Part shown: one piece after another, positions 1 to 23,390 of the stretch
Layout: every line of letters starts with the position of its first letter
Numbering within the stretch: position 1 is the first letter of the stretch
IMG/VR virus record: IMGVR_UViG_3300023174_000039
Coordinates: 248,001 to 312,000 of that record
DNA: 64,000 bases
Reading direction: 5' to 3' (one strand)
The notes under the pieces: generated by a model
What the model was told of the DNA's origin: nothing
What the model saw: only the letters and a program-made list of their open reading frames with translations
Database searches by the model: none
Position numbers and translations under genes: made by a program

Positions 1-703
1 CTAACTTGATCTCGGTAGCACCTGGTACTGTGTATGTTACACCACTTGCTGATTGGTACTGACTTGGGAAGTGATAAATGTAGGGTGGATCTAGCAGGTT
101 AGGGTGCCACGAATAATTAACAGAGTCAACTTTGATAGTAGCAGGAACTGACCAATTGTCTTTACAGGGCAATGTGGTCACTTGAAACGCATCCACCAAC
201 TTGATTTCAGTGGCACCAGGCACAGTGTATGTTACACCACTGGCTGATTGCCATTGATCTGGAAAGTGATAAATGTAAGGTGGTGCAAATGGATCAGGAT
301 GCCATGAATAATCCACGCTGGCAGTAGCGACACTGTCGGGTATGAACCAATGTTGGTTACAGGGCAATGTGGTCACTTGAAACGCATCCACCAACTTGAT
401 TTCAGTGGCGCCCGGAACGACATATGTTACCCCACTTGCGGGTTGCCATTGATCCGGGAAGTGATAAATGTAAGGCGGGTCTAGCGGGTTAGGATGCCAT
501 GAATAATCAACGGTGGACTTTGAGACAGAGTCTGGTATTAACCAATTGTCTTTACAGGGCAATGTGGTCACTTGAAACGCATCGATTAGTTTGATCTCAG
601 TGGCACCGGGCACAGTGTATGTTACACCACTGGCTGATTGATACTGGCTTGAAAAATGATAAATGTAAGGAGGATCCAATGGATCTGGGTGCCATGAATA
701 GTC
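1..703 (-). repeat. 195-bp coding tandem repeat, about 3.6 copies, plus one diverged copy extending to about 895
   Basis: The block agggcaatgtggtcacttgaaacgcatc recurs at 166, 361 and 556 (period 195 nt = 65 aa). Confidence 0.92.
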
Positions 704-1231
704 TACTCTGTCAAAGTTCACATGATTTGGGCATTTCCAATGTGCGTATTGTCGGGTTGCTTTAGCCTGTTGTGTATGTACCAGCTTGATACCCTGATTG
801 CCTGTGTACACAGGACCACCGGCGCTTTGCCATTGTGTGCCAAAGTGATATTCATATGCTGGTTCACGATAGTCCGGATGCCATGAAAAATCAAAACTAT
901 GTTGATCAATTCCTGCAGGAATCCGCCAGTTATCTACTGTAGACAATCTTGTGATAGTACGATCTACATGATAGTGTGTTTCAGTATAGCCCGCAGCAGG
1001 CACAAGATACACACCTGCATCTGCTTGATGTTGGCTAGGCCAGGCATGTCGCTGATGAGCTTGCCAAGGAACAGGCTCCCAAAGAAAATCCCACTCTCTA
1101 AGATCTGCTAAGTATGTGATCCACCAAAAGAACCTTGTGCGACTCAACTGCTGTGCATGCCCAATATCACTTGCTTCACGCTCATGAGCAAACAACCCTG
1201 GCTTCTTACCTGAATAAAAAATATCAAACAT
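2..1231 (-). CDS. Repeat-containing protein (Trp/His/Pro-rich 65-aa repeats), runs off the left edge; not in the ORF track
   Basis: Minus-strand frame from ATG at 1231 (in-frame TAA upstream at 1250-1252) reads MFDIFYSGKKPGLFAHEREASDIGHAQQLSRTRFFWWITYL... and stays open to the window edge. It contains repeats of DYSWHPxPxDPPYIYHFPxQxQSASGVTYTVPGATEIKL. Confidence 0.85.
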   Translation of the reverse strand, partial: MFDIFYSGKKPGLFAHEREASDIGHAQQLSRTRFFWWITYLADLREWDFLWEPVPWQAHQRHAWPSQHQADAGVYLVPAAGYTETHYHVDRTITRLSTVDNWRIPAGIDQHSFDFSWHPDYREPAYEYHFGTQWQSAGGPVYTGNQGIKLVHTQQAKATRQYAHWKCPNHVNFDRVDYSWHPDPLDPPYIYHFSSQYQSASGVTYTVPGATEIKLIDAFQVTTLPCKDNWLIPDSVSKSTVDYSWHPNPLDPPYIYHFPDQWQPASGVTYVVPGATEIKLVDAFQVTTLPCNQHWFIPDSVATASVDYSWHPDPFAPPYIYHFPDQWQSASGVTYTVPGATEIKLVDAFQVTTLPCKDNWSVPATIKVDSVNYSWHPNLLDPPYIYHFPSQYQSASGVTYTVPGATEIKL

Positions 1232-2336
1232 GATTAGAATAGACGAAATTTACAACAACACTTTTTGGCCCTGGATTAATAATCAAATCCCTGGCACTAG
1301 AACATACTTCTGTGATCCACCTGGCCGCAGTGATCCAGATGCATTGTTTAACTTTGGTCGAGATGACATTCCCGAAAACGATTTTGTGTTTTTCCATGAT
1401 CAAGAACCTGTGCATTTAGATCTTCATAGACCTTTGTTTACACAGGTCAGAGAGTACACCGAAGACATTAGAAAAAGCAACGGCGATGTCAAAAAAGGCG
1501 GGCATGTAATTGTCAGCGAGCATGGAGAATACGTGCGTGAGTTGTGTCGTGCATACGGATGGAAGAGCCATTATTACTTTTATCATGGATGGGCTTGCAA
1601 GGATTGGTTTCGAGGATATGATAAAACTTTCTTGATCCCTCGAGCAAAAGACAGAGCTCCTACACGCACATTTATGAGTCCTAATAGGATTGTTGCCGGC
1701 AAACGAGATCACAGAGTTTTGTTTTTGTATAATGTATTTAAGCACGGGCTAGATCAAAATTATATTTCGGCTCCTAGAATATGTCCTTACGAAAATGTAG
1801 ATATTTCACAGATAGCACTCAAGTATAATAACATATATCCTGACATAGAGCAAGTGTTCTTGGCAGCAGAATTGCCTAGATTGTTTGCCGGCGAAGACAC
1901 TCAGATCATGACCAGCTGTTGGTTGGGCAACTATGCAGAAGCACAAGACAGTTTGGTGTATGTTCCTACAGAGACTGTGTACTTTGGCAAACGATTACAC
2001 ATCACTGAGAAAACATTCAAGGCAATTGCCTTGGAAATGCCATTTGTGCTGGTAGCGCCTGCACACAGTTTGGAGTACATGCGCAGTTATGGATTCCAAA
2101 CATTTGATGGTATATTTGATGAGAGCTATGATCAGGAAACGGATGATAACAAACGTATTGAAAAAGTTACTCAGCTACTAAAAGATCTAGATAATTTATC
2201 CGTAGCAGAACGTCAACAGATACATCGTGCTTGCTTGCCCATTGTTCAACACAATTTTGAACACTTTTATGGCACCGGATTGGAAAACATCCTGTGGCCT
2301 GAACTGATCAACATGCTGAATGAACTTCGTAGCTGA
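1230..2336 (+). CDS. Glycosyltransferase-like protein, TEK family (GT10/fucosyltransferase-like C-terminal motif)
   Basis: PTETVYFGKRLHITEKTFKAI...PF...L...GFQTF...DESYD resembles the GT10 donor-binding ENxxxxxYxTEK motif; three paralogues in the window. Confidence 0.55.
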   Translation: MIRIDEIYNNTFWPWINNQIPGTRTYFCDPPGRSDPDALFNFGRDDIPENDFVFFHDQEPVHLDLHRPLFTQVREYTEDIRKSNGDVKKGGHVIVSEHGEYVRELCRAYGWKSHYYFYHGWACKDWFRGYDKTFLIPRAKDRAPTRTFMSPNRIVAGKRDHRVLFLYNVFKHGLDQNYISAPRICPYENVDISQIALKYNNIYPDIEQVFLAAELPRLFAGEDTQIMTSCWLGNYAEAQDSLVYVPTETVYFGKRLHITEKTFKAIALEMPFVLVAPAHSLEYMRSYGFQTFDGIFDESYDQETDDNKRIEKVTQLLKDLDNLSVAERQQIHRACLPIVQHNFEHFYGTGLENILWPELINMLNELRS

Positions 2337-3474
2337 TTCAATCATCAAAGGTCGGCCATACCCTGCACTGGCACAGCATCAAGCTATACCTTACACACAG
2401 GGCTGGAGAGAATTTGGAAAACATTGGCCACATACTACTCCTGCTGAGTTATTTGGACACATGAGTGATCATGGGTACCAGTATAGTTTGACCACAGAAG
2501 GCAACGGGTACTATGTAATTGGGCTGGGATTCTTTGATTTCACCATTGATTACTTTGCTCTTGTTGACCGTGCATTACTGCAAAGAATTCAGCAAAAGCT
2601 AGTGACTGTGCTGTTTTACTACCACGAAGGCGATAATCCGCACAACATCAAACAGCGTCTGGATTCATTATGCCAATTGCATGGATTGTCAACCGATTGC
2701 TATCGCTTTGTTAGCGGTAACACTGCTGCCAATTCAATCCCGGGCTTTGTGTACTTTCCTGATCATGAACTGTTGTTCTGGCGCAGGAATCAAGATGTAG
2801 CACCTGTTGTGTTGCACACTAACACAAGGCCATATACATTTGTCGCACTAAGCAGAACACACAAATGGTGGAGAGCAGCCATCATGGCAGACCTGTTACA
2901 AAGCAACATGCTGTCACAGAGTTTGTGGAGTTACAACACTGAGTTGCCACTGGGAGATGATCCTGCGGACAATCCCATAGAACAACTGCCCAATGTTGAT
3001 GTTGATGTGTTCATGACAAACGGACCATACAGATGTGACACATTAACAGTGGATGAACACAACAATCATGCATTAACAGTACCCGAGCATTACACGGATG
3101 CATATTTTAATGTTGTAGTAGAAACACACTTTGATGCTGACGGATCTGGTGGTGCTTTCCTAACTGAAAAAACATTCAAACCCATAAAGAATGCACAACC
3201 ATTTGTGCTGGTTGCACCAGCTGGTAGTTTACAATGCTTACGTGAGCTAGGATATCGTACATTTGATTCCGTGCTGGACAATAGCTACGATTTGGAAACA
3301 AACAACACTCAGCGTTGGCTCAAAGTAAAACAAACATTACAACAAATACAACAAGATCCACACGGCATTTTTTTACGCTGTCGTGATGATATACTGCACA
3401 ACCAGCAGTTATTTCAATCCACGAAACTGGACAGATTAAATACTTTACTAAAGAACCTATATGAACAAAATTAA
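2320..3474 (+). CDS. Glycosyltransferase-like protein, TEK family
   Basis: VVVETHFD...FLTEKTFKPI...PFV...LRELGYRTF...DNSYD; paralogue of 1230..2336. Confidence 0.55.
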   Translation: MNFVADSIIKGRPYPALAQHQAIPYTQGWREFGKHWPHTTPAELFGHMSDHGYQYSLTTEGNGYYVIGLGFFDFTIDYFALVDRALLQRIQQKLVTVLFYYHEGDNPHNIKQRLDSLCQLHGLSTDCYRFVSGNTAANSIPGFVYFPDHELLFWRRNQDVAPVVLHTNTRPYTFVALSRTHKWWRAAIMADLLQSNMLSQSLWSYNTELPLGDDPADNPIEQLPNVDVDVFMTNGPYRCDTLTVDEHNNHALTVPEHYTDAYFNVVVETHFDADGSGGAFLTEKTFKPIKNAQPFVLVAPAGSLQCLRELGYRTFDSVLDNSYDLETNNTQRWLKVKQTLQQIQQDPHGIFLRCRDDILHNQQLFQSTKLDRLNTLLKNLYEQN

Positions 3475-4486
3475 CTCCTACACCAGCTGGCAACCTCTTG
3501 AAGAGGTCATTGTGGGTCGCGCCTACTCACCTGATTACTTTGACTTTATTGACAATCCACAAGTGCGTAATCAACTGCAACAGATTCTCTACGAGACTGA
3601 AGAAGACTTGAACGGCCTACAACGAACCATTGAAAAGTATGGTGCTCGAGTACGTCGTCCTAACTTGCCCAGTAAAGACTCGTTTATTTGGCACCAAACA
3701 GAGGGCGGAGGTGCTCCGCTGCCGCCACTGACACCACGCGATTGGCAAATCACCATGGGCGACAAACTGTTGCGGGTGCTCAACATGGAAGAACTAGATG
3801 ACATCTGTGCCGACTTTGGCGATCAAGTTGTTAACCCTCACAAGAGTCGGTGGGACGAAGACTGTATCTTAAATGGTGCGAGTGCCAGCTGTATTGTGCG
3901 TGTGGGTCGCGATGTGTTCTTTGACAACTCAGATTTTTTACGTCCTGATCAAACCAAGTGGATTGTGGACAATGTGCTAGGAGAAGGGTATCGTGTTCAC
4001 GAAGCTATCACAGACGGTCATGGAGATGCTGTGTTTGCTATTCTCAAGCCCGGTGTGTTGCTATCCAGCAAACACGATGTGAACTTGGATCTGGCCAAAG
4101 ATTTTCCTGGCTGGGACGTTTGCAAGATCTGGGACAGTTCAATCTGGGCTGCCATGGAAGTGGGCAAGTTCAAATACGAGCAAACTCCTGGTGCTTGGTA
4201 TGTGCAAGGACAAACACCCACAGCTGAGTTCACAAAGTTTGTGGACACATATTTAAACAAGTGGACTGGCTTTGTGGCCGAAACTGTGTTTGATGTCAAC
4301 TGCCTGGTACTGGATGAAGAAAATGTTATCTTCAGCGCCTACAACCGAGAAGTGTTTGACTACTGTAAAAAACATCGTATCAATCCCATTATCAGTGAAC
4401 TGCGCCACAGCTACTTTTGGGACGGTGGCATCTCATGCTGTACACAAGATCTACGTCGTCGTGGCGGCCTAGAAGATTATCTATAA
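3461..4486 (+). CDS. Amidinotransferase (glycine/inosamine-phosphate amidinotransferase family)
   Basis: N-terminal NSYTSWQPLEEVIVGR, PRD motif, HGD (catalytic His), DVNCLVLDE, C-terminal GGISCCTQDLRR (catalytic Cys). Confidence 0.85.
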   Translation: MNKINSYTSWQPLEEVIVGRAYSPDYFDFIDNPQVRNQLQQILYETEEDLNGLQRTIEKYGARVRRPNLPSKDSFIWHQTEGGGAPLPPLTPRDWQITMGDKLLRVLNMEELDDICADFGDQVVNPHKSRWDEDCILNGASASCIVRVGRDVFFDNSDFLRPDQTKWIVDNVLGEGYRVHEAITDGHGDAVFAILKPGVLLSSKHDVNLDLAKDFPGWDVCKIWDSSIWAAMEVGKFKYEQTPGAWYVQGQTPTAEFTKFVDTYLNKWTGFVAETVFDVNCLVLDEENVIFSAYNREVFDYCKKHRINPIISELRHSYFWDGGISCCTQDLRRRGGLEDYL

Positions 4487-4508
4487 GCATGTTGCAGAGG
4501 ATATAAAA

Positions 4509-5177
4509 ATGAAAATATTGGTCAATGGCGACAGCAACATGTGCGGCGAAGAACTTGAAGACCGCAGTCTGGGTATATCATCACAGGTGGCCAAGATATT
4601 GGGTGCGGATATCAACAATCTTAGTCTCAGTGGCAGTAGCAATGATCGAATATACAACAGCACCATGGATTATGTTCTTAATCAGCCCACACCAGATCTG
4701 GTTCTGATTGGCTGGAGTGAAATGTGTCGTGTGCAATGGTTTTTGGATGATGTGCATCCGTTTGGTGAGTTTGTGGAAATAAACAACCTGGGTGTGGGAC
4801 GTCGTGAGTATCCAGACCATTATGCCAGGCGTCTAGAAAGATGGCACGAAATCAGCAACAATCTAGAATTTCGTACACATCTCAGTTACTACTGGCACGA
4901 ACGCATATATAACTTACACAAGTTTTTGCAAAACCGATGTATTAATCATTTGTTTTTTCATTCATTTCATGACTTCAAAGTAACTGATGCAAATGATCAG
5001 CTTGACTGGTCCAACTGTTTTATGGATCCTTACAGCTGGGACAACACCTATGTGCATTGGTGTGCAGATCAAGGATACAAAGAAATAACGCCTGGATGGT
5101 ATCATTATGAACCTGCGGGACAACGTGCGTGGGCCGAACGCATCGTTGAGTATATTAAACAACACAATATTATATGA
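4509..5177 (+). CDS. SGNH/GDSL hydrolase-like protein
   Basis: N-terminal ILVNGDS, NxSxSGSSN block, C-terminal HYEPAGQ. Confidence 0.65.
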   Translation: MKILVNGDSNMCGEELEDRSLGISSQVAKILGADINNLSLSGSSNDRIYNSTMDYVLNQPTPDLVLIGWSEMCRVQWFLDDVHPFGEFVEINNLGVGRREYPDHYARRLERWHEISNNLEFRTHLSYYWHERIYNLHKFLQNRCINHLFFHSFHDFKVTDANDQLDWSNCFMDPYSWDNTYVHWCADQGYKEITPGWYHYEPAGQRAWAERIVEYIKQHNII

Positions 5178-6289
5178 TTTATTCCGTTGACCAAATTCGA
5201 CATCTACATTTAGAAATAAGCAGTTTATGCAATGCCGCGTGTCCGTTGTGCCCTAGAAATTTCAATGGCTATAAACACAATGCAGGATACACAGAGCACA
5301 ACATGTCATTGGCAGAGGCACAAAAAATATTTCCCGTGGAGTTTGTGCAACAACTAGAGGTCATAGTGATCAATGGGAACTTTGGCGATGCTGTAATGAA
5401 TCCAGACACTGTGCCAATTGTTAGATATTTTAAAGAACACAATCCCAAGATACATATCAATATCAGCACCAATGGTGCCGCAAGAGATGCCAGATTCTGG
5501 AAAGACCTGGCAGCATCTGATGTTGAAGTGAGTTTTTGTATTGACGGCGTTGATGATTTCACGCACGGACTGTATCGACGCAACACAATGTACAGCACAA
5601 TCATGCGTAACTCTGCTACATTTATAGCTGCCGGAGGACGAGCTAACTGGAAGATGATTAAGTTTGATCATAATGGTCCATTTCAGGAACAGGCCCATCA
5701 GCTCAGCATACAAAGAGGATTCACGAATTTTTCACTGATCAACGACGGACGAGACATAGGACCTGTTTACAATGACCAAGGCGATTTACAATACACCATT
5801 GGAGAGGCACGGATCGATTGGCAGCCACCTGCAAGAATTGAACCGTTGTTAGAAATGAATTTTGATGAAAAATTCAAAGGTAATCAGATTATCTGGGTCA
5901 AGAAAGAAGAGATCAAAGAAATCCACTGTGAAGTTGCAGTATCAAAAAGTGTATATGTCAGCAGTACCGGAGATGTGTTCCCTTGTTGTTACATGGGCAT
6001 AAATCCTGCTGAATACAGAAACAATACCAGTCACGGATACAGCATGGAACAAATCAATCAGATTATGGCCAAGAACAATGCACTAGAGCACGATCTTGCC
6101 ACCTGTATTGCATGGTTTGATCACATTGAATCCAGCTGGAACAAAGACTCATTTGAGAATGGCAGATTACTGACCTGCAATCAATCATGCGGAGGCGACA
6201 ATCAGCGTCCGCAGTTTCATGTCAAAGAAGCCACAATATACTATAACGATGTTAACGGGTCCCAAACCCAGGATCAGGCCACCGACTAG
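5174..6289 (+). CDS. Radical SAM protein with C-terminal SPASM/twitch-like domain
   Basis: CNAACPLC (CxxxCxxC), STNG, C-terminal C...GDVFPCC...CNQSC. Confidence 0.9.
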   Translation: MIYSVDQIRHLHLEISSLCNAACPLCPRNFNGYKHNAGYTEHNMSLAEAQKIFPVEFVQQLEVIVINGNFGDAVMNPDTVPIVRYFKEHNPKIHINISTNGAARDARFWKDLAASDVEVSFCIDGVDDFTHGLYRRNTMYSTIMRNSATFIAAGGRANWKMIKFDHNGPFQEQAHQLSIQRGFTNFSLINDGRDIGPVYNDQGDLQYTIGEARIDWQPPARIEPLLEMNFDEKFKGNQIIWVKKEEIKEIHCEVAVSKSVYVSSTGDVFPCCYMGINPAEYRNNTSHGYSMEQINQIMAKNNALEHDLATCIAWFDHIESSWNKDSFENGRLLTCNQSCGGDNQRPQFHVKEATIYYNDVNGSQTQDQATD

Positions 6290-8463: not shown

Positions 8464-9110
8464 TGTATTCCTGTCAATTTATTTTTTAATACCGGGACAA
8501 TTACTTGATTGTAGTATCGTTGATGTCCGTCGTTGTTGGGATGGTCGCACACTGATGATTCTGCTTTGGTCCACTTGAAATCAGCAAAAGATAAAAACTG
8601 CGAATCACGCAGTCGATCAAGCACATGGTTATTCAGAGAAGGTATGTGTACAGGGTCAGGCATACACCAGAGAAAATCTGCACCCACCAGCTGGGCAGAA
8701 GCATATGCAGCCAACAATGTTGTGATTGAACTAGCATGCCCTATTCTATCACTGTACAAATATTTGTAGTAGTGTTCTACGGCTGTTTCAAGTTGAGGAA
8801 ATGTGCGATCTGACTGCCAGTTTGGGCCAATTGATTCGGCTGCATTTTCAGTGCGTCTGATTTGAATTCGAGCGGCAAACGACACACAACATATAACCAA
8901 TTTGATATCGTCGGTTAGTTCTTGATGTAATCGTTCCACAATAGATGCATTGCTGTAGCCTGGGCGGGAACGATTGTCCACTGTGACAGCAAACTCTTTT
9001 TGTATTAAACTAGGCCATGCATACTCACTTGGTTTAGCAATATAACCCATGGGGGTATCCGAGCATCCTTGACCAAAGGTAAAACTATCTCCTAATACCA
9101 CAATTTTCAT
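8460..9110 (-). CDS. SGNH/GDSL hydrolase-like protein
   Basis: LGDSFTFG, NRSRPGYSN, C-terminal DHPNNDGH. Confidence 0.75.
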   Translation of the reverse strand: MKIVVLGDSFTFGQGCSDTPMGYIAKPSEYAWPSLIQKEFAVTVDNRSRPGYSNASIVERLHQELTDDIKLVICCVSFAARIQIRRTENAAESIGPNWQSDRTFPQLETAVEHYYKYLYSDRIGHASSITTLLAAYASAQLVGADFLWCMPDPVHIPSLNNHVLDRLRDSQFLSFADFKWTKAESSVCDHPNNDGHQRYYNQVIVPVLKNKLTGIQ

Positions 9111-10684: not shown

Positions 10685-10685
10685 A

Positions 10686-17801: not shown

Positions 17802-18891
17802 TTAAAAATTGCTCTAATAGTAAGGGAAGGTGAGCACGTTGTTGTTGGTTGTACTCCACAAGATGTTGCTGATTGTATTTACAGATGTCGCGGCTGGCTC
17901 GCCAGAAATGTTCAGGACCACTTTTCAAAATATAACGCACTGTTTCTATTATACGCTTGATCCTGGCATGTGGACAATCAATTTGGTCGTAGGATTCATC
18001 TATAATGCCATCAAATGTTTGAAAGCCAGCATGCTGTAGGTCTCGAAGATAGCCGCAATTGGCAGCAACCACAAACGGATGTGCCATCAGAATTGGCTTG
18101 TAGATCTTTTCTGTTCTAAATGAATACGGATAATCAAATATGGTTTCTGACACTAGGCTAAACCAAGAGTCTGTGTAGCAAAAATGATTAACTATGGCAT
18201 CGCCCCAGGTGTTACCAAACAACTCATGCTTGATAAAACCCGATGTGCTCACCGTGGTCAATTGTGGCACAGCACGTGAAATTTCATACTCTGGAGGCAG
18301 TAATCTTATGTGCTCCTGTTTGTCGGGAGTGAGTCTGGATGTGAATTCCATTTCTACTGTGCTGCCTAGATTGGTCCACAATGCACGATCCAATAGTCCT
18401 TGATCACGCAGACCGTCAATTAAACATTTACGATGGGGGCGTAAGCGGCCGTTTAAAAACAAAAACTCATAGGGTCTTGAATCTGTATACTCCCATAATG
18501 CTTGTATCTGTGATGCCCGATTTTCCCTGTATTCAACAATGTTTGAAAAGTAACAATCTGTACTGAAATGATTCCACCCAGGTTCTAGGCCACCAGATGT
18601 CATTAACAGTATGCGGCCATCACGCACATGGTCTTCTATCATGAGTCGTTTCAATTGTAGCAGGATAGTTTCGCTTCCTTCTGCAGGATTACAAAATACA
18701 ATCCGACCCGGATGTTCCGTTGCCCATGTGGTTATTGCTGTCCAGTTGTCTTTTAACAACAGCCGCCCAATGATGTAAATATTTTCTGGATTCAAGTCAG
18801 GCATTTGCCAAAATGAGTCGTCGGCATAGGGCTTGAGTAAATCCCACACTTCAGCCCATTCGTCTACCACAATCTTATGTGTTCCTAGCAT
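17767..18891 (-). CDS. Glycosyltransferase-like protein, TEK family
   Basis: FSLVSET...FRTEKIYKPI...HPFVV...GFQTF...DESYD. Confidence 0.55.
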   Translation of the reverse strand: MLGTHKIVVDEWAEVWDLLKPYADDSFWQMPDLNPENIYIIGRLLLKDNWTAITTWATEHPGRIVFCNPAEGSETILLQLKRLMIEDHVRDGRILLMTSGGLEPGWNHFSTDCYFSNIVEYRENRASQIQALWEYTDSRPYEFLFLNGRLRPHRKCLIDGLRDQGLLDRALWTNLGSTVEMEFTSRLTPDKQEHIRLLPPEYEISRAVPQLTTVSTSGFIKHELFGNTWGDAIVNHFCYTDSWFSLVSETIFDYPYSFRTEKIYKPILMAHPFVVAANCGYLRDLQHAGFQTFDGIIDESYDQIDCPHARIKRIIETVRYILKSGPEHFWRASRDICKYNQQHLVEYNQQQRAHLPLLLEQFLNERSRIPSTTP

Positions 18892-20266
18892 GATACTTGC
18901 ATTCGGCCCACCAGGCTCGCATTTCAGGAAACGTATTTAAAAAGTCTGTGCCTCTACGGCGATCGTGCTCACTAAAGAATCTATAGAAATCGGCTTGTGC
19001 TACAGCATTAGACTGTGATTGACCTTCACGCATCCAGGCAATATCTCGTTCCAGGCGCTGTACTTCGTAGTCTTTGAATCCGTGCAAAGGATTAGCGTCA
19101 GTTGTCATGTTGTCCAGCATGAAGTTTCTGGCACGTTCTAGTTGCACAGCATAGCTTTCTGGCAACAGTTGTAGACTTTGCCAAGCAGGTTCACGGAGCA
19201 CAGGTGTATCAAACCACACACGTTGATATGTAGCAGAATGCTTTTTGCGCAGAGCAAGTATCCATTCTAGCAATACTGGCAAGCCAGTCACTGTGAGATT
19301 GTTCATTGTGATAATAAACGTTAGACTATTGCGGTTTGGTATCTCGTGCAAGAATCGTTCAACGTTTCGGGCCATACGTGCATAGTCCAGGCCATGGCGT
19401 ATGTACTCGGCTTGTGCGGCATGGCCAGAATCCAAACTAACATACTGCATGAAGTGTTCAATACGCGGAGTACATAGTTTTTTGGCATAATCCATGTACT
19501 TTTCAAACAATGTGTCTTCTACTGAAAAGTTAGATGTCACATTCAAGTGCAGTTTGGGATTGTCGTGCTCTAACACATAGTCAAATACTCTGTAGGTATT
19601 ACGATCCATGAGTGGTTCGCCGCCGGTCATGCGGAAGTGTTCCAGCTGTGGGTACAGTGTGGGCCACCATTCCCAAAATGCATCTACGTAAGGGTTAGCA
19701 GTCCGATTAGGAATAGGTCTGCGATCACCACTGAAATGTTCAGGTGCATTATGAGGGCGACTGGTGGGGTAAGCCCCAAGTCTTTCCATTTCATCTTGCC
19801 AGCTTGAACTAAACTGGGGTGAGCAATAACTACATTTAAGATTACAAGCGTGATTAAAATTAACTTCCACATAACTGGGGATAATATCATCTTCGTTTCC
19901 CGTGCTGTTACGAATTTTTTCTAGATCCACAGCGGCCCAAGGTTCACCTGAACGATAGTGCCGATCACTCAGCTTGCCTAGATTTTCCATGTTCCAACAG
20001 TACTGACATTCACTGGGTTTTTCACCAGACAACATCATTTTTCTTTGTGCTTTTTTATGATCAGTATTGTGCAAGCCACCTGGACGTTTTATATCTTCTG
20101 GGCTGATGCGATGCAGTGGAGGATGGTAGCAAGAATTGTTTAGTCCTGTTGGCAAGTGAAAACTAACTTGTTTCCACTTGGCCAGACACAGCGCCGGGCC
20201 AAGTTCTTGTTGCATCTGCTCGGCAGAGCTCATAAACCCGCTTTGATCACCTTTGCTCATTACCAA
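18875..20266 (-). CDS. Radical SAM protein with N-terminal twitch-like domain (subtype A)
   Basis: LCLAKW...SCYHPPLH...CQYCW, CNLKCSYC, TGGEP, C-terminal HDRRRGTDF. Confidence 0.9.
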   Translation of the reverse strand: MVMSKGDQSGFMSSAEQMQQELGPALCLAKWKQVSFHLPTGLNNSCYHPPLHRISPEDIKRPGGLHNTDHKKAQRKMMLSGEKPSECQYCWNMENLGKLSDRHYRSGEPWAAVDLEKIRNSTGNEDDIIPSYVEVNFNHACNLKCSYCSPQFSSSWQDEMERLGAYPTSRPHNAPEHFSGDRRPIPNRTANPYVDAFWEWWPTLYPQLEHFRMTGGEPLMDRNTYRVFDYVLEHDNPKLHLNVTSNFSVEDTLFEKYMDYAKKLCTPRIEHFMQYVSLDSGHAAQAEYIRHGLDYARMARNVERFLHEIPNRNSLTFIITMNNLTVTGLPVLLEWILALRKKHSATYQRVWFDTPVLREPAWQSLQLLPESYAVQLERARNFMLDNMTTDANPLHGFKDYEVQRLERDIAWMREGQSQSNAVAQADFYRFFSEHDRRRGTDFLNTFPEMRAWWAECKYHARNT

Positions 20267-21192
20267 CCTTCTTGCTTGCGTATGACATCAATCTCACGTG
20301 TCATAGCACCTTGGTTGTGCCAATTGCTACGATAATGGCGTTTGAAAAATGCGCTTTGCTCTTGTTCCAAAATAGCCATGGGCAAATCTAACTGAGTTCC
20401 TAAATCAACACCCAGTTGGTTGCTGAGTAATCGCGGTTGGCTGTCTTTAACTGTGAGCCATAATTCAGATAATGCATCAAACCATTGCACCTGTTTGTGA
20501 TCCCAATTGGTAAGCATGGTCATGTATGTGCCTTGTCGTGCGCCAGCAATGGCCCATTCACCGTGGTCAACATCTGTACCCACATTATGCCAGATGGTCA
20601 AGTTCTCTAGGTTTTTCTTGTGTGCTTGTTCTTTGAAGTCTTCCACTGTGGGCTTGGCGCCTTTGTTCAGACACATCTTTACACCCTCACGGAAGCCGGC
20701 ACGCCAAGCATGAAATGCATCACCGTTGGGATAAGTTGTTGAGTAGCAGTCGTACATGGGCCAGTACAAGGGATCAAAACAAAACTCTACTTCAGTTTCT
20801 GTACGGCCGTCTGTGGCTTCGTGTGTGCGCATGTTCATTACAAATTCTTGTGTCCACGAACTTAGACCTCCGTTGCCATACATGAGTCCATTGACGTGAT
20901 TACGGGCTCTCCAGCGGAACACTGCTTTTTCATACTCTGCAGTGGGAAATGACAGTGTTTGATTAAAGAACTCTGGGTCAGGCATGTTGTCGCCATCAAT
21001 GAGAATAAAGCGTTCAGTATCAGACGCTTCGGCAGCTGCCTTGTGTGCGGCATCACTTCCTTTGACCCCATCCACACGCTTGGCCCAAGGTACCATGTTG
21101 CGTATCTTGACCCAAAATTCTTCTTTCTGTGGTTCGTCGTAGGTTAGATAAATGCAGTCTAGATCTGCTACATCAATTTGATTCAAAGCCAT
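20260..21192 (-). CDS. Putative GT-A fold glycosyltransferase
   Basis: N-terminal strand plus YDEP, AHKAAA helix and hydrophobic-DxD motif FILIDGDN. Confidence 0.55.
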   Translation of the reverse strand: MALNQIDVADLDCIYLTYDEPQKEEFWVKIRNMVPWAKRVDGVKGSDAAHKAAAEASDTERFILIDGDNMPDPEFFNQTLSFPTAEYEKAVFRWRARNHVNGLMYGNGGLSSWTQEFVMNMRTHEATDGRTETEVEFCFDPLYWPMYDCYSTTYPNGDAFHAWRAGFREGVKMCLNKGAKPTVEDFKEQAHKKNLENLTIWHNVGTDVDHGEWAIAGARQGTYMTMLTNWDHKQVQWFDALSELWLTVKDSQPRLLSNQLGVDLGTQLDLPMAILEQEQSAFFKRHYRSNWHNQGAMTREIDVIRKQEGW

Positions 21193-21514
21193 GTGTTTGT
21201 TTACTCCATCGTTGGTGCGTATCAGATTCGGAAACTACAATGCTAACATCACGGGGATGACATGGTGTTCCTGTTTCTGTAGGTTTTAATTTACTAATAA
21301 TATTTTCTGTAAGTTCATACAGTTTTCCTTTGTGTACTCTCACATTTGCAGGGTTTCGACTGTATGTTTCGTGGTCAATTTCTATGTATGTACCTGGCAA
21401 ATCTTCCATGCTATAGAATAACGGAATTCCTTGTTGGTCGTAGTACAATCTATAAAAAATGTCATAGACTTTGGGAGTATCTGTTAGAATTTTCCAGAAC
21501 TCTTCATCTGTCAT
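21173..21514 (-). CDS. Hypothetical protein
   Basis: 113-aa ORF overlapping both neighbours in operon fashion. Confidence 0.7.
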   Translation of the reverse strand: MTDEEFWKILTDTPKVYDIFYRLYYDQQGIPLFYSMEDLPGTYIEIDHETYSRNPANVRVHKGKLYELTENIISKLKPTETGTPCHPRDVSIVVSESDTHQRWSKQTHGFESN

Positions 21515-22292
21515 TGGTCCACTCCTTGACTCTGTAATGCAAGGCTCCCCATTGTACTATGGTGTTGATCTTGGCTATGTAGTTGTGGTATTCAAACACA
21601 AACTCATCAAGCCAGGCCTCTGTACGACTGCCGGCATGTTGTTGCTTCATGTGGGTAATCTGTGGGTAACTGGCAAATGGCATGGTACATCGTTCTGCGC
21701 CAATGATATTGGCAGCCATAGCATACACTAGATCCGTGCTTGGAATGTCTTCGGGGAACTTCAATAACTTCCGATATTCTTCCCAGTTTTCAAATATCTT
21801 GCGTACTGTATCAAAAAATTCCTTGGCTGTTTCACTGAGTCTCCAGTATGTGATAGCATTGTACACATCTGGAAGGTCGTTGGCATCAAATACTTTGCGA
21901 TAGTATCTGCTGGCGGCCTGTTGGTTTTTCCAATCTCTGCAACCAGTTGATACCACTAGATCACGATTGCGTAACAGAGTCCACCAGTGATCAATAGGGC
22001 TAGTAATCATCATGTCTGCTTCCAGCTTGATTGTTTCTCTAAACGGTGTTGCACGAAACACTTGCCAGTCGTTGGCCCAGGGGTTTTCTAAATCCAACGG
22101 ATAAGGAAACTCACGCACATAGTCAAACAGCGGCGGATTTGATGCATCTGTAGCATTGGTCAGCAAACAGATTTGCGCATCAGGATGCCAGTATTTGATG
22201 GTCTTGGCCAGTGTTTCGGCACAACTCACATAGTTTGTGCCGGGTATGTTAATTGCTACTATTAGGTAGCCTTGTTCGGCGATCGGTTTCAA
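21504..22292 (-). CDS. GT8-like glycosyltransferase
   Basis: Y..CA..LA.TIK, TPFRETIKLEADM (ExD in place of DxD), YNA, late HMK motif. Confidence 0.6.
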   Translation of the reverse strand: MKPIAEQGYLIVAINIPGTNYVSCAETLAKTIKYWHPDAQICLLTNATDASNPPLFDYVREFPYPLDLENPWANDWQVFRATPFRETIKLEADMMITSPIDHWWTLLRNRDLVVSTGCRDWKNQQAASRYYRKVFDANDLPDVYNAITYWRLSETAKEFFDTVRKIFENWEEYRKLLKFPEDIPSTDLVYAMAANIIGAERCTMPFASYPQITHMKQQHAGSRTEAWLDEFVFEYHNYIAKINTIVQWGALHYRVKEWTNDR

Positions 22293-23088
22293 CGATGTCT
22301 CCTAGATGTTTTTTGCCCATGGCATGGAAATCCAAGCCTTCGAAGCTCATGTGTTTGAGCTTCTGGTCACTGTCTGTGTATTCTATTGCGTATGAATCAC
22401 TGTTGAGATGTTTCAAGTGTCTGCTTAATCGTGTGTTGGGCATGACGCTGGGCAAGGCCCAGGGTATTTCGTCTACCTTCATTGTATGTCCACTCACAAT
22501 GCCCAGTGCAATACTTAATGCAAAGTCGTTGCGATAGGTAGCACGATCAATGTTGTACAAGTCTCTATAATGCTGCCAGTTGTCTCGCACCATTTGCATG
22601 CAATCAAATATATATTGTGCAGTATTGCTCTTACGGAACATCATCACTGTGGCCCACCACATGGGTATGTTGTATTGTCCAAACATGTTTAGTCCACGCA
22701 TGTCTGTTTGTCCAGCAAGGTCAAATGCTTGTCTATGGCACATGAAGTCTTGCTGTGCGTTTAGTAATTGTTTTAGATTGTTACTGGCCACAACATAGTC
22801 AGCATCCAGCACAATAGTTTGATCATACGGGGTCAAACTGTATGCGTCAACACGCCCGGCATTGTGCCAAGTCACTGTTTTGTCATAATCTTCAAAGTAG
22901 CGAGTACCGCCTGATTCAGCATCAGCGCGGATCACACGGTCAAATGCTGTGCCAGTGTATTCAATATTGGTCACTACACTAACAGGTAGATTCAAATGTC
23001 GACGTACATTGCCAGCACTCCATTCAGCCATGGCCAAGTAGTCTGTTTCTTCGTTGTTGAAGGCAAAGATTAGCACACCTGCGGTCAT
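22249..23088 (-). CDS. GT8-like glycosyltransferase
   Basis: TPYDQTIVLDADY (DxD), RND, late HAMGK motif; paralogous to the adjacent gene. Confidence 0.65.
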   Translation of the reverse strand: MTAGVLIFAFNNEETDYLAMAEWSAGNVRRHLNLPVSVVTNIEYTGTAFDRVIRADAESGGTRYFEDYDKTVTWHNAGRVDAYSLTPYDQTIVLDADYVVASNNLKQLLNAQQDFMCHRQAFDLAGQTDMRGLNMFGQYNIPMWWATVMMFRKSNTAQYIFDCMQMVRDNWQHYRDLYNIDRATYRNDFALSIALGIVSGHTMKVDEIPWALPSVMPNTRLSRHLKHLNSDSYAIEYTDSDQKLKHMSFEGLDFHAMGKKHLGDIVETDRRTRLPNSSN

Positions 23089-23390
23089 CGTTGCTTTCTT
23101 AATTCTTCATGCTCTGCAAGCCATCCGTTCATTTGCTCTTGCCATCGTTGCTGTGCTGCCAGTTCAAGTTCTCTAACATCAACCTTTACTGGAGTTTCGT
23201 ACAAGTCTAGCAACACTGCTGTGTCATCAGGGCACACAGCTAGCACGGCCAATAGTTCAGCACCTGCTCTCCACATACCACCTGCATAAGCAAACAACAT
23301 GCGAGCTTCGTATTTTTCTTTTAGTACACGTTTTGCGGCAACGTGATCAAACCTTGCTCGTGCGTGAGCAACTAATTCATTGGTATCCAT
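23085..23390 (-). CDS. Hypothetical protein, first gene of the leftward modification operon
   Basis: 101-aa ORF directly behind a sigma70-like promoter. Confidence 0.75.
   Translation of the reverse strand: MDTNELVAHARARFDHVAAKRVLKEKYEARMLFAYAGGMWRAGAELLAVLAVCPDDTAVLLDLYETPVKVDVRELELAAQQRWQEQMNGWLAEHEELRKQR

What the first reader, a model, noticed from the sequence alone, without database searches (positions are those of the whole stretch)
1..23390. Phage-encoded ~23 kb tailoring factory (7 radical SAM, 7 GT-like, carbamoyl- and amidinotransferase, 3 SGNH) next to the tail fibres
Seen: 20+ tightly overlapping genes, almost all of them modifying enzymes, directly downstream of the fibre genes. 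No nucleotide-metabolism gene (thymidylate synthase/hydroxymethylase, kinase) and no PKS/NRPS is in the window. Known: the same enzyme families tailor aminoglycoside sugars (twitch radical SAM dehydrogenase BtrN and epimerase NeoN, amidinotransferase StrB1, carbamoyltransferase TobZ). Inference: the phage builds a glycan with the GT-A/GT8 and TEK transferases, then oxidises or epimerises, carbamoylates, amidinylates and acylates it. The target could be virion proteins, the host surface or phage DNA. I know of no characterised phage pathway of this size.
Basis: partly seen in the sequence, partly recalled or inferred. Interest (0 to 1): 0.9.

Follow-up and report, generated by a model that had tools for sequence, protein, structure and literature searches.

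The report
Jumbo-phage sugar-tailoring gene island
A widespread group of uncultured giant phages carries a conserved gene island of about 30 kb that appears to build and chemically decorate an unusual sugar chain using five to seven radical SAM enzymes; no characterised phage pathway like it was found, and what the sugar is attached to is still unknown.

Summary
Window 1230-23390 contains 22 tightly packed genes.

- **Radical SAM enzymes.** There are seven: six paralogues of NCBIfam NF033640, which has an N-terminal twitch domain, and one classical rSAM/SPASM enzyme.
- **Confirmed tailoring enzymes.** g09 is a NodU/CmcH-type carbamoyltransferase. g03 is an AGAT/StrB1-type amidinotransferase with its catalytic Cys and His/Asp conserved.
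- **Glycosyltransferases.** Four paralogues (g01, g02, g12, g16) model as a GT-B fold closest to GT10. g20 and g21 have only weak GT-A/GT8 support. g18 is GT-like by motif only.
- **SGNH genes.** The three are weakly supported and lie in a strain-specific insert.

New evidence favours a glycan pathway:
- A DegT aminotransferase and a sugar dehydratase lie just left of the window.
- Bacterial NF033640 members sit in polysaccharide loci, and some are fused to GT4 domains.
- None of the proteins has a transmembrane segment.

The core order g22 to g09 plus g03 recurs in about 80 IMG/VR contigs. A reduced version sits beside the fibre genes of the cultured Ralstonia phage RsoM2USA. A conserved terminator and sigma-70-like promoter separate the island from the fibre genes.

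My best reading is a cytoplasmic glycan-tailoring pathway, probably decorating virion fibres. The acceptor is unproven. DNA, the host envelope, a small molecule and a peptide remain rivals.

The parts
1..1231 (-). g00. This is the 5' part of a 2047-aa protein whose remainder lies left of the window. It has about 22 tandem 65-aa modules with the motif 'D(Y/F)SWxPDPxDPPYIYxF', followed by three C-terminal modules. The last module is homologous to g18.
   Evidence: Six-frame reading. A 195-bp tandem repeat, 3.6 copies, at 3-700. The full ORF is L088:9920-16063. blastp of g18 against the g00 C-terminus gives 1e-7. No Pfam match.
1230..2336 (+). g01. Family-B glycosyltransferase-like protein (GT-B fold, closest to GT10). 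It is variable among relatives.
   Evidence: Paralogue of g02, g12 and g16. The family fold comes from the g16 model. Identity to relatives is 38-75% and presence is patchy.
2320..3474 (+). g02. Family-B GT-B-like glycosyltransferase.
   Evidence: blastp to g16 at 3.5e-18, and also to g01 and g12. It is a member of alignment A3.
3461..4486 (+). g03. Amidinotransferase of the AGAT/StrB1 family. It is highly conserved, with a median identity of 83%.
   Evidence: Profile A4 against PDB sequences: AGAT 7.5e-19, StrB1 4.3e-14, HsvA 5e-13, SxtG 8.8e-13. Cys326 aligns with the Cys of the AGAT 'GGGFHCWT' motif, and His187/Asp189 align with its 'HIDA' motif. Also matches phrog_25854.
4509..5177 (+). 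g04. SGNH-like protein with an N-terminal GDS motif. It belongs to the variable insert.
   Evidence: DUF6071 at 26.2 bits against a cutoff of 27. The motif 'NGDSNMCG' was read directly. Found in only 3 of about 80 loci.
5174..6289 (+). g05. Classical radical SAM enzyme with a C-terminal SPASM domain. It belongs to the variable insert.
   Evidence: Radical_SAM at 30.3 bits and SPASM at 21.7 bits, both at their cutoffs. CxxxCxxC at residue 19. Only weak matches to many maturase families.
6252..7196 (-). g06. Possible SGNH-like protein in the variable insert. The start codon is probably called too far upstream, because the ORF overlaps g07 by 146 nt.
   Evidence: No Pfam, PHROG or NCBIfam match. 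The motif 'VGDSFCS' was read directly.
7051..8463 (-). g07. NF033640 radical SAM enzyme with an N-terminal twitch domain. It is an extra paralogue, closest to g15.
   Evidence: NF033640 at 260 bits against a cutoff of 170. 41% identical to g15. A true orthologue is present only in L004/L005.
8460..9110 (-). g08. SGNH/GDSL-like protein, unique to this phage among the loci fetched.
   Evidence: Lipase_GDSL_2 at E 1e-4 and 23.3 bits, below the cutoff of 32.9. No orthologue in any of about 80 loci.
9111..10586 (-). g09. O-carbamoyltransferase of the NodU/CmcH/TobZ type. Core gene.
   Evidence: Carbam_trans_N at 2.2e-34 and Carbam_trans_C at 4.7e-49. NodU model at 132 bits, far below its equivalog cutoff of 1000. 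46% identical to RsoM2USA ORF199.
10686..11756 (-). g10. Conserved core protein of unknown fold.
   Evidence: No Pfam, PHROG, NCBIfam or PDB-sequence match. AF2 model at pLDDT 76 has no PDB fold match; the best TM-score is below 0.2.
11743..13056 (-). g11. NF033640 twitch radical SAM enzyme. Core gene.
   Evidence: 267 bits. Median identity 75% across 68 loci.
13034..13981 (-). g12. Family-B GT-B-like glycosyltransferase, variable among relatives.
   Evidence: blastp to g16 at 1.5e-21. Median identity 33%, and absent from many loci.
13968..15191 (-). g13. NF033640 twitch radical SAM enzyme. Core gene.
   Evidence: 332 bits. SPASM match at residues 9-78, N-terminal to the rSAM core.
15188..16477 (-). 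g14. NF033640 twitch radical SAM enzyme. Core gene and the best match to the family model.
   Evidence: 405 bits. 187 IMG/VR relatives were found, and the 80 kept are 71-100% identical. 7779 database proteins at E<=1e-5.
16449..17801 (-). g15. NF033640 twitch radical SAM enzyme. Core gene.
   Evidence: 306 bits. 51% identical to RsoM2USA ORF202.
17767..18891 (-). g16. Family-B glycosyltransferase, the member that was modelled.
   Evidence: AF2 pLDDT 89.3 and pTM 0.88. Foldseek against PDB: top hit 2nzw, alpha1,3-fucosyltransferase, probability 0.99; the other top hits are nearly all GT-B enzymes. Against BFVD: many uncultured-phage proteins, Mimivirus L138, and giant-virus fucosyltransferase-like and dehydratase-fused proteins.
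18875..20266 (-). g17. NF033640 twitch radical SAM enzyme. Core gene.
   Evidence: 312 bits. 36% identical to RsoM2USA ORF349, which lies next to the g18-like gene there.
20260..21192 (-). g18. The most conserved core protein (median identity 78%), with a 'DGDN' motif. GT-A-like by motif only. It is homologous to the C-terminal module of g00.
   Evidence: Alignments A2 and A6. No Pfam or PDB-sequence match. 39% and 34% identical to RsoM2USA ORF350 and ORF348.
21173..21514 (-). g19. Small conserved protein of 113 aa, function unknown.
   Evidence: No family match. Present in 72 loci.
21504..22292 (-). g20. Putative GT-A nucleotide-sugar transferase, GT8-like with weak support.
   Evidence: phrog_1903 at 2.7e-9. 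Paralogue of g21. A 148-sequence profile gives glycogenin as 12 of its 13 best PDB matches, at E 0.23-1.1, aligned across the DxD motif. A few family members hit Mannosyl_trans3 or Nucleotid_trans at 0.0018. hhalign against WaaJ/WaaO was negative.
22249..23088 (-). g21. Putative GT-A transferase carrying 'LDADYVV'. Paralogue of g20.
   Evidence: blastp to g20 at 1.1e-8. One Asp of the DxD-like motif (D93, g20 numbering) is invariant across 148 sequences. 28% identical to RsoM2USA ORF353.
23085..23390 (-). g22. Small helical protein and first gene of the operon.
   Evidence: No family match. Weak similarity to RsoM2USA ORF354, 24% identity at 1e-6.
23397..23442 (-). A conserved terminator hairpin after fibre gene g23, overlapping a sigma-70-like promoter (TTTACT-N17-TATACT) for the island.
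   Evidence: Scan. 36 of 40 distinct orthologous spacers keep TTTACT-N16-18-TAnAAT. 25 keep a perfect hairpin, with at least four different stem sequences.
23461..26825 (-). g23, g24 and g25. Fibre-like structural genes directly upstream of the island. They are candidate acceptors and are not themselves enzymes.
   Evidence: g24 matches PHROG virion structural families and g25 matches phrog_11259. g23 is rich in Ser, Thr, Ala and Gly. A T4-type TATAAATA motif lies 26-33 nt upstream of g24.

Best explanation
The island encodes a phage-run, entirely soluble pathway that makes and heavily tailors an unusual oligosaccharide.

**Proposed steps (inferred):**
1. A 4,6-dehydratase-type SDR and a DegT aminotransferase, both just left of the window, supply an NDP-amino-deoxy-sugar.
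2. Four GT-B (GT10-like) transferases, and probably two or three GT-A-like transferases, assemble the chain.
3. Five conserved NF033640 radical SAM enzymes, plus two extra in this phage, carry out radical chemistry on the sugars. Candidate reactions are oxidation, epimerisation, deoxygenation or C-C/C-methyl bond formation. Each enzyme has an N-terminal auxiliary Fe-S (twitch) domain.
4. The NodU-type enzyme O-carbamoylates a hydroxyl group.
5. The AGAT-type enzyme converts an amine to a guanidine.
6. Strain-specific SGNH enzymes add or remove acyl groups.

**Proposed acceptor (inferred).** The most likely acceptor is a phage structural protein, probably the fibres encoded directly upstream. 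That would make this a virion-glycosylation system, analogous to the giant-virus fibril glycosylation clusters.

**Shown here:** the enzyme families, their linkage, and their association with glycans. **Inferred:** the order of steps, the radical reactions and the acceptor.
For: **Enzyme identities.**

**NDP-sugar genes.** DegT at 5.6e-61 and Epimerase/GDP_Man_Dehyd at 2.4e-44 lie beside the island in the source contig. They are conserved next to g00, g01 and g02 in relatives.

**The rSAM family is linked to glycans in bacteria.**
- On a Methylomagnum plasmid it lies among GT2, GT4, GT39, polyprenyl synthase and ABC transporter genes.
- In L103 it is fused to a GT4 domain inside a Wzm/Wzt locus with GT2, GT4 and polysaccharide deacetylases.
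- In L104 it lies next to GT2 and an RmlA/RmlC/SDR set.
- Four listed homologues are rSAM-GT4 fusions and three carry CBM_4_9.
- Brachyspira plasmid pBHWA1 combines rfbABCD, glycosyltransferases and about seven rSAM genes.

**A cytoplasmic acceptor is favoured.** None of the 26 proteins has a transmembrane-grade hydrophobic segment.

**Link to fibres.**
- The order fibres, g22, g21, g20, g19, g18, g17 is kept in about 80 contigs.
- The same order is kept in the distant cultured phage RsoM2USA (ORF355 to ORF349). There a GDP-mannose dehydratase (ORF358) sits among proteins detected in virions by mass spectrometry, ORF356 and ORF361 (PMC8504454).

**Analogy to giant viruses.** The g16 fold resembles Mimivirus L138 and giant-virus glycosyltransferases fused to dTDP-glucose dehydratase.

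**Pattern of variation.** The GT-B genes are variable (33-51% median identity, patchy presence) while the rSAM, g18 and g03 genes are conserved (70-83%). This is the pattern expected for a surface glycan under diversifying selection.
Against: - There is no direct evidence for any acceptor.
- The island has its own conserved sigma-70-like promoter behind a terminator, rather than the T4-type late motif seen upstream of g24. It may therefore be expressed earlier than the fibres.
- The radical SAM core is as similar to peptide maturases (TvgB 1.3e-11, CteB 2.3e-8) as to sugar enzymes (BlsE 2.3e-7, BtrN 5.6e-6).
- g10, g18, g19 and g22 have no assignable function.
- In RsoM2USA the carbamoyltransferase and one rSAM gene lie at a second locus about 90 kb away.
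- Only about 74 kb of the 332-kb genome was examined, so DNA-modification genes elsewhere cannot be excluded.
Confidence: 0.45

Rival explanations
1. DNA hypermodification. The transferases glycosylate a hydroxymethyl-pyrimidine or another modified base in phage DNA. The sugar or the base is then carbamoylated, amidinylated and radical-modified to evade host restriction.
For: - All proteins are soluble.
- A non-late, sigma-70-like promoter would suit an early DNA-modifying function.
- The variable glycosyltransferase repertoire resembles the variation among T-even phage glucosylation systems (the comparison rests on my own knowledge).
- ThyX lies about 7 kb to the left.
- To my knowledge, carbamoyl and glycosyl derivatives of 5-hmC have been reported for phage TET-linked clusters (Burke et al. 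2021). I did not check this here.
Against: - No hydroxymethylase, TET/JBP enzyme, DNA kinase or base-exchange enzyme is present in the window or in the 10-kb left flank. ThyX is an ordinary dTMP synthase family.
- No T4 alpha- or beta-glucosyltransferase appears among the 50 best PDB fold matches of g16.
- RsoM2USA has a separate T4-type beta-glucosyltransferase (ORF2) and extra thymidylate-synthase-like genes elsewhere in its genome (PMC8504454).
- Seven transferases and seven rSAM enzymes far exceed any known DNA sugar modification (my knowledge).
Confidence: 0.15
2. Host envelope remodelling. The phage makes or alters a host surface polysaccharide (LPS, capsule or S-layer glycan) early in infection, to block superinfection or to prevent progeny from being trapped.
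For: - Bacterial homologues of the rSAM family sit in O-antigen-type loci with Wzm/Wzt exporters.
- The promoter is sigma-70-like and therefore possibly early.
- SGNH enzymes commonly O-acetylate or de-acetylate surface glycans (my knowledge).
Against: - None of g00-g25 has a membrane-spanning segment. There is therefore no initiating phosphoglycosyltransferase, flippase, ABC exporter, polymerase or ligase. The phage would have to feed host machinery.
- The island is linked to the fibre module in both the clade and RsoM2USA.
Confidence: 0.12
3. A diffusible small molecule. The island makes an aminoglycoside- or nucleoside-antibiotic-like pseudo-oligosaccharide that acts on the host or on competitors.
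For: The enzyme families match those of aminoglycoside pathways. StrB1 and SxtG are among the PDB relatives of g03. BtrN and BlsE are among the relatives of the rSAM enzymes, and the N-terminal domain aligns with the twitch domain of BtrN. g09 belongs to the same Pfam family as TobZ, by my knowledge. All enzymes are soluble.
Against: - No scaffold-forming enzyme was found, such as a 2-deoxy-scyllo-inosose synthase or an inositol-phosphate synthase. No exporter or self-resistance gene was found either.
- Rapid turnover of the glycosyltransferase set among close relatives is atypical for a fixed metabolite.
Confidence: 0.1
4. Peptide or protein radical modification. The twitch rSAM enzymes act on a protein, such as a fibre or the small products g19 and g22, as RiPP-type maturases do. 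The sugar enzymes would be a separate, merely adjacent function.
For: The best solved-structure match of the rSAM profile is the RiPP cyclopropyl synthase TvgB (8vpo, 1.3e-11; identified from PMC10878394). CteB, anSME, SkfB and YydG follow. Two small conserved ORFs sit in the operon.
Against: - The similarity is confined to the generic rSAM core.
- No RRE or leader-peptide features were seen.
- The family is fused to GT4 and CBM4_9 domains and embedded in polysaccharide loci in bacteria.
- The rSAM genes alternate with GT-B genes in the island.
Confidence: 0.08

Closest known systems
Giant-virus glycosylation clusters, for example the Mimivirus fibril cluster with dehydratase R141, aminotransferase L136 and glycosyltransferases L137/L138 (gene names from my own knowledge)
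   Same: Both are virus-encoded, host-independent and soluble sets made up of an NDP-sugar 4,6-dehydratase, a DegT aminotransferase and several glycosyltransferases. The g16 fold matches Mimivirus L138 and giant-virus glycosyltransferases fused to dehydratases. The flank carries DegT and SDR genes.
   Different: This system is in a bacterial virus. It has five to seven radical SAM enzymes, a carbamoyltransferase and an amidinotransferase, none of which I know from those clusters. No glycosylated protein has been shown.
Mycobacteriophage virion glycosylation (Freeman et al. 2023, from my own knowledge; the paper was not retrieved here)
   Same: Phage glycosyltransferase genes lie next to the structural genes they are thought to serve.
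   Different: Those systems have one to a few glycosyltransferases and no radical SAM or amidino/carbamoyl tailoring. Here the island is a separate transcription unit of more than 17 kb.
Bacterial polysaccharide loci that contain NF033640 or multiple rSAM genes: Methylomagnum pRS11DPr1, metagenomic loci L103 and L104, and Brachyspira hyodysenteriae pBHWA1
   Same: They combine the same radical SAM family with GT2/GT4 enzymes and NDP-sugar enzymes. Some show rSAM-GT fusions, and some carry multiple rSAM genes.
   Different: The bacterial loci carry membrane exporters and lipid-carrier genes. The phage island has none. To my knowledge none of these bacterial rSAM enzymes has been characterised, and no paper was found.
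   Same: StrB1 and BtrN are detectable relatives. g09 matches the Pfam carbamoyltransferase domains to which TobZ belongs, by my knowledge.
   Different: The twitch domain is N-terminal rather than C-terminal. No cyclitol-forming enzyme is present, and there are many more glycosyltransferases. Similarity to the named enzymes is at superfamily level only.
Ralstonia phage RsoM2USA, ORF346-358 and ORF199-202 (closest cultured relative)
   Same: It has homologues of g22, g21, g20, g18 (two copies) and g17 in the same order beside the fibre genes. It also has homologues of g15 (51%) and g09 (46%).
   Different: Its set is reduced to two rSAM genes and is split over two loci. All of these genes are annotated as hypothetical, and their function has not been studied (PMC8504454).

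Membership tests
NCBIfam NF033640 (radical SAM protein with an N-terminal twitch domain) | Whole-protein score above the curated cutoff of 170 bits | tested here: met
   g07 260, g11 267, g13 332, g14 405, g15 306 and g17 312 bits. g05 scores only 27.7 bits and is not a member.
NCBIfam NF033640 (radical SAM protein with an N-terminal twitch domain) | A Cys-rich auxiliary-cluster domain lying N-terminal to the CxxxCxxC radical SAM core | tested here: met
   Four invariant N-terminal Cys residues (C34, C53, C95, C98 in g14) plus C149, C153 and C156, and the GGEP motif, across 12 sequences. Pfam SPASM hits fall at residues 9-99, ahead of the core. Profile positions 13-94 align to BtrN residues 161-249.
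Radical SAM sugar-modifying enzymes (BtrN, DesII, BlsE type) | Demonstrated activity on a sugar or NDP-sugar | not testable with these tools
   There is only context evidence, namely GT4 fusions and polysaccharide loci. Sequence similarity does not separate sugar-acting from peptide-acting enzymes.
NodU/CmcH/TobZ O-carbamoyltransferases | Both Carbam_trans_N and Carbam_trans_C domains above the Pfam gathering score | tested here: met
   119.9 bits and 166.6 bits, against cutoffs of 24 and 27.
NodU/CmcH/TobZ O-carbamoyltransferases | Equivalog-level identity to NodU (cutoff 1000 bits) | tested here: not met
   132 bits. g09 is a family member but not a NodU orthologue.
Amidinotransferases (AGAT, StrB1) | Significant sequence relationship across the whole fold | tested here: met
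   The profile hits AGAT at 7.5e-19 in three stretches covering N-terminal, middle and C-terminal parts. It also hits StrB1, HsvA and SxtG. The single sequence gave no Pfam hit at E<=0.01.
Amidinotransferases (AGAT, StrB1) | Catalytic Cys, together with His and Asp | tested here: met
   Cys326 aligns with the Cys of AGAT 'GGGFHCWT'. His187 and Asp189 align with its 'HIDA' motif. All three are invariant in 14 orthologues. The catalytic roles of the AGAT residues come from my own knowledge.
GT-B glycosyltransferases, GT10-like (g01, g02, g12, g16) | Two-Rossmann-domain GT-B fold | tested here: met
   The g16 model has pLDDT 89. Nearly all of the 50 best PDB matches are GT-B enzymes, with 2nzw (GT10) on top at probability 0.99. 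E-values (1.9e-3 and weaker) and TM-scores (0.34-0.47) are modest.
GT-B glycosyltransferases, GT10-like (g01, g02, g12, g16) | Sequence membership of a CAZy or Pfam GT family | tested here: not met
   No Pfam hit for any of 27 members, and no PDB-sequence hit. Only an 'E..TEK'-type C-terminal motif, read from alignment A3.
GT8 / GT-A (g20, g21) | Significant match to GT8, or a GT-A fold | tested here: inconclusive
   A 148-sequence profile puts glycogenin first, but at E 0.23-1.1. One Asp of the DxD-like motif (D93) is invariant. A few members hit GT-A Pfam families at 0.0018. hhalign against WaaJ/WaaO was negative.
GT-A (g18) | Any detectable similarity to a known glycosyltransferase | tested here: not met
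   No Pfam, PDB-sequence or hhalign match. The DGD motif is present in g18 and the RsoM2USA copies but absent from the homologous g00 module.
SGNH/GDSL hydrolases (g04, g06, g08) | A match above the Pfam cutoff | tested here: not met
   g08 scores 23.3 bits against a cutoff of 32.9. g04 matches only DUF6071, at 26.2 against 27. g06 has no match. Block-I GDS motifs are visible by eye.
Und-P-dependent surface polysaccharide pathways (Wzx/Wzy or ABC type) | A membrane initiating transferase, a flippase or exporter, and a polymerase or ligase | tested here: not met
   No 19-residue window exceeds a Kyte-Doolittle mean of 1.6 in any of g00-g25. No such Pfam families were found.
Phage DNA hypermodification systems | A linked enzyme that creates the modifiable base (hydroxymethylase, TET/JBP enzyme or base-exchange enzyme) | tested here: not met
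   None was found in the 64-kb window or the 10-kb left flank; only ThyX is present. The rest of the 332-kb genome was not examined.
Phage virion glycosylation | A glycan demonstrated on a virion protein | not testable with these tools
   This needs glycoproteomics. Only gene linkage to the fibres is shown.

The most novel reading that the evidence does not exclude
The island is the first autonomous protein-glycosylation system of a bacterial virus that uses radical SAM chemistry. On this reading, five to seven enzymes of the uncharacterised NF033640 family, each working with a partner glycosyltransferase, create new sugar structures (C-branched, epimerised or deoxygenated, and bearing guanidino and carbamoyl groups). 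These structures form a glycan coat on the fibres of an abundant clade of environmental jumbo phages and shape host recognition or evasion of defence.
Probability: 0.3. Interest if true: 0.9.

Novelty: new variant of a known kind. Interest (0 to 1): 0.75.

Why it matters
- **Scale.** If this is right, phages can run glycan biosynthesis of a complexity so far documented only for giant eukaryotic viruses and for bacteria.
- **A handle on an unstudied enzyme family.** It would open NF033640 to study. The family is large: the closest homologues of g14 alone number more than 7,700 database proteins. The fusions and contexts found here point to carbohydrate substrates.
- **Abundance.** The clade is common in metagenomes: 187 IMG/VR contigs were recovered with one probe. 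Any virion glycan would therefore matter for phage-host recognition in natural waters.
- **Testability.** A cultured relative with a reduced island, RsoM2USA, makes the question experimentally tractable.

Tried and rejected
- **megablast of bases 1-23390 against the phage collection:** no match.
- **Pfam, PHROGs and NCBIfam on single sequences:** nothing for g01, g02, g06, g10, g12, g16, g18, g19, g21 or g22. g20 matched only phrog_1903, which has no known function.
- **Profiles A1, A2, A3, A5 and A6 against PDB sequences:** nothing meaningful.
- **Pfam scan of all members of A3 and A5:** noise only.
- **hhalign of A5 against A2, and of A5 and A6 against an E. coli WaaJ/WaaO pair:** negative, although the GT8 profile had only two sequences.
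- **g10 structure:** a medium-confidence model with no fold match.
- **Genome-contig scan:** spent on a single protein. It returned only two phage contigs binned into a Haliscomenobacter MAG, so bacterial contexts had to be reached another way.
- **First homologue search with g14:** returned only clade orthologues.
- **Literature searches** for the rSAM family name, and for jumbo phage with radical SAM or carbamoyltransferase: no description of such a cluster.
- **Rfam and tRNA scans of the window:** empty.
- **Extended -10 promoter:** I first read the promoter as a canonical extended -10 element. The TG abuts the hexamer directly, so I dropped that claim.
- **Counts of sigma-70-like and TATAAATA motifs:** both are at chance level across the window. 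Only the conservation of the g23-g22 spacer carries weight.

Full report
**What is in the window**

The window comes from a 331,654-bp IMG/VR contig, IMGVR_UViG_3300023174_000039, and corresponds to contig coordinates 248,001-312,000. It is a jumbo myovirus with T4-like modules:
- a gp25-like protein, a gp6-like baseplate wedge and a hub protein;
- a gp55-like late sigma factor;
- gp46/gp47-like nuclease subunits.

Its wedge protein is only about 34% identical to those of Atu_ph07, CBB, XbC2 and the Rak2-like phages. No cultured phage is close at the DNA level.

**Gene map**

| Position | Strand | Genes |
|---|---|---|
| <1-1231 | minus | g00, running off the left edge |
| 1230-6289 | plus | g01-g05 |
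| 6252-23390 | minus | g06-g22, converging on g05 |
| 23461-26825 | minus | fibre-like g23-g25 |
| 26994-41804 | minus | a 4936-aa ORF |
| 41804-45271 | minus | baseplate wedge |

Seventeen of the 21 junctions between g01 and g22 overlap.

**Checking the inventory**

*Radical SAM enzymes.* All seven carry CxxxCxxC.
- Six are mutual paralogues: g07, g11, g13, g14, g15 and g17. They score 260-405 bits on NCBIfam NF033640, 'twitch domain-containing radical SAM protein', whose cutoff is 170.
- Their auxiliary-cluster domain is N-terminal. Pfam SPASM hits fall at residues 9-99, ahead of the core.
- Four N-terminal Cys residues are invariant, together with the core Cys triad and the GGEP motif.
- The N-terminal region aligns with the C-terminal twitch domain of BtrN.
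- g05 is a conventional rSAM/SPASM protein.

*Tailoring enzymes.*
- g09 is a clear NodU/CmcH-family carbamoyltransferase.
- g03 is an amidinotransferase. A 14-sequence profile hits AGAT (7.5e-19), StrB1, HsvA and SxtG. Cys326 aligns with the Cys of the AGAT 'GGGFHCWT' motif, and His187/Asp189 align with 'HIDA'. All three residues are invariant.

*The 'TEK' proteins.* g01, g02, g12 and g16 are paralogues with no Pfam or PDB-sequence match.
- An AlphaFold model of g16 (pLDDT 89) is a GT-B fold.
- Its best PDB match is the GT10 alpha1,3-fucosyltransferase of H. pylori. Nearly all other top matches are GT-B transferases.
- In the viral structure library it matches many uncultured-phage proteins, Mimivirus L138, and giant-virus fucosyltransferase-like and dehydratase-fused proteins.

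*Less secure assignments.*
- g20 and g21 are paralogues that belong to a large family: 2302 clusters at 50% identity. A 148-sequence profile of that family puts glycogenin (GT8) first among solved structures, aligned across the DxD motif, but only at E 0.2-1.
- g18 has a DGD motif but no detectable relative of known fold.
- g04, g06 and g08 have GDS motifs, but their SGNH matches are sub-threshold or absent.
- g10 gives a medium-confidence model with no fold match.
- g19 and g22 are small proteins of unknown function.

**Conservation**

A probe with g14 recovered 187 IMG/VR contigs, and the 80 kept are 71-100% identical to the query. Across them the order g24-g23-g22-g21-g20-g19-g18-g17-(g16)-g15-g14-g13-(g12)-g11-g10-g09, followed by the convergent g03-g02-g01, is kept.

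| Class | Genes | Median identity or presence |
|---|---|---|
| Conserved core | five rSAM genes, g18, g03, g09, g10 | 65-83% |
| Variable | GT-B genes | 33-51%, patchy presence |
| Variable insert | g04-g07 | g04-g05 in 3 loci; true g07 orthologue only in L004/L005; g06-like ORFs in 6, mostly about 29% identical |
| Variable insert | g08 | no other locus |

Loci that span g18 to g09 carry five to seven NF033640 genes and zero to four GT-B genes.

The only cultured phages with relatives are distant:
- **Ralstonia phage RsoM2USA** keeps homologues of g22, g21, g20, g18 (two copies) and g17 in the same order, directly after its fibre genes. A g15 homologue (51%) and a g09 homologue (46%) lie at a second locus.
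- **Vibrio phages K566 and K567** have four NF033640-like genes in a cassette.

**The island extends beyond the window**

g00 is a 2047-aa protein. It has about 22 tandem 65-aa modules followed by three C-terminal modules, and the last of these is homologous to g18.

Immediately beyond it lie three further genes:
- a DegT/DnrJ/EryC1 aminotransferase (5.6e-61);
- an NAD-dependent epimerase/dehydratase (2.4e-44);
- ThyX.

The first two are conserved beside g00, or directly beside g01 and g02, in relatives. Together they are the standard route to an NDP-amino-deoxy-sugar, which is established knowledge of these families. Such a sugar would supply the amine that an amidinotransferase needs; that step is my inference.

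**Is the radical SAM family tied to sugars?**

Sequence similarity does not settle this. The nearest solved structures are the RiPP cyclopropyl synthase TvgB (8vpo; PMC10878394), CteB, viperins, BlsE, MoaA, BtrN and anSME.

Context is more informative.
- **Methylomagnum plasmid:** a family member lies among GT2, GT4, GT39, polyprenyl synthase and ABC transporter genes.
- **Homologue list:** four of the 120 listed homologues of that protein are fused to GT4 domains, and three carry a CBM_4_9 module.
- **L103:** the fusion protein sits in a Wzm/Wzt locus with GT2, GT4, deacetylases and further rSAM genes.
- **L104:** the gene sits next to GT2 and an RmlA/RmlC/SDR set.
- **Brachyspira pBHWA1:** the plasmid combines rfbABCD, glycosyltransferases and about seven rSAM genes.

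I take this as good evidence that NF033640 enzymes act in glycan biosynthesis.

**Which acceptor?**

- **No membrane proteins.** None of g00-g25 has a transmembrane-grade hydrophobic segment. The usual lipid-carrier and export route is therefore not encoded, and a cytoplasmic acceptor is favoured.
- **Linkage to fibres.** Linkage to the fibre module is kept across the clade and in RsoM2USA. In that phage a GDP-mannose dehydratase (ORF358) lies among proteins detected in virions, ORF356 and ORF361 (PMC8504454).
- **A separate transcription unit.** Against simple co-expression, the 70-nt spacer between g23 and g22 holds a terminator hairpin followed by TTTACT-N17-TATACT. In 36 of 40 distinct orthologous spacers the promoter-like element is kept. 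In 25 there is a perfect hairpin, with at least four different stem sequences, which indicates compensatory change.
- **Late motifs.** The T4-type late motif TATAAATA occurs upstream of g24 and of the gp25-like gene but not here. Its count in the window is at chance level. The island is therefore its own transcription unit, and it may be expressed before the late genes. The timing is an inference.
- **No DNA-modification genes nearby.** No base-modifying enzyme was found in the 74 kb examined. The g16 fold does not resemble the T4 DNA glucosyltransferases among its 50 best matches.

**Verdict**

The interpretation that a glycan is built and then tailored is supported and extended. The specific aminoglycoside-like reaction assignments, and the GT-A/GT8 labels for three genes, are not established. 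The target is open.

I rate the statement 'this is a glycan biosynthesis and tailoring island' at about 0.8. I rate 'the acceptor is a virion protein' at about 0.45 overall, with these rivals:

| Rival | Confidence |
|---|---|
| DNA hypermodification | 0.15 |
| Host envelope remodelling | 0.12 |
| Small molecule | 0.10 |
| Peptide modification | 0.08 |

No paper in the searched library describes such a phage cluster or the rSAM family.

Noticed in passing
window 26994-41804 (-): A single 4936-aa ORF lies between the baseplate wedge gene and the fibre genes. It is presumably a giant fibre or decoration protein. RsoM2USA has a counterpart, ORF361, which runs off the fetched locus (at least 2541 codons) and was detected in virions at more than 288 kDa.
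   Followed up: partly
window 1-1231 (-) and L088:9920-16063: g00 is a 2047-aa protein with about 22 tandem 65-aa 'WxPDPxDPPYIY' modules. These appear at the DNA level as a 195-bp tandem repeat at 3-700. Three C-terminal modules follow. The start codons of g00 and g01 overlap back to back at 1229-1232. Function unknown.
   Followed up: partly
window 59758-60768 (+): An eighth radical SAM gene (336 aa; Radical_SAM and Fer4_12) lies outside the island, between the Rad50-like gp46 homologue and a SegE-type GIY-YIG endonuclease gene.
   Followed up: no
window 56970-57680 (+): A Methyltransf_24 gene is inserted between the SbcD-like (gp47) and Rad50-like (gp46) nuclease genes.
   Followed up: no
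window 61238-61970: A 730-bp stretch has no ORF of 100 aa or more, no tRNA and no Rfam match. It lies between convergent genes.
   Followed up: partly
L081 and L082 (NZ_JBBAKG010000003.1 and NZ_JBBAKG010000001.1): Two contigs of 148 and 183 kb, filed under a Haliscomenobacter sp. MAG, carry the whole island at 66-83% identity for the core genes. They are phage contigs of this clade. This is either a binning artefact or a hint about the host.
   Followed up: partly
L084 (Vibrio phage K566, record 160-171 kb): A cassette of four NF033640-like radical SAM genes is interleaved with hypothetical genes in a KVP40-like phage. A marine T4-like environmental genome with 12 rSAM genes is mentioned in PMC5332604. 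rSAM-rich cassettes may be a wider feature of large myoviruses.
   Followed up: no
window 61971-62531 (-) and 62845-63276 (-): A PNP_UDP_1 phosphorylase-family gene lies here, together with a small ORF that weakly matches the C-terminal domain of arginyl-tRNA-protein transferase (E 4e-4, below cutoff).
   Followed up: no
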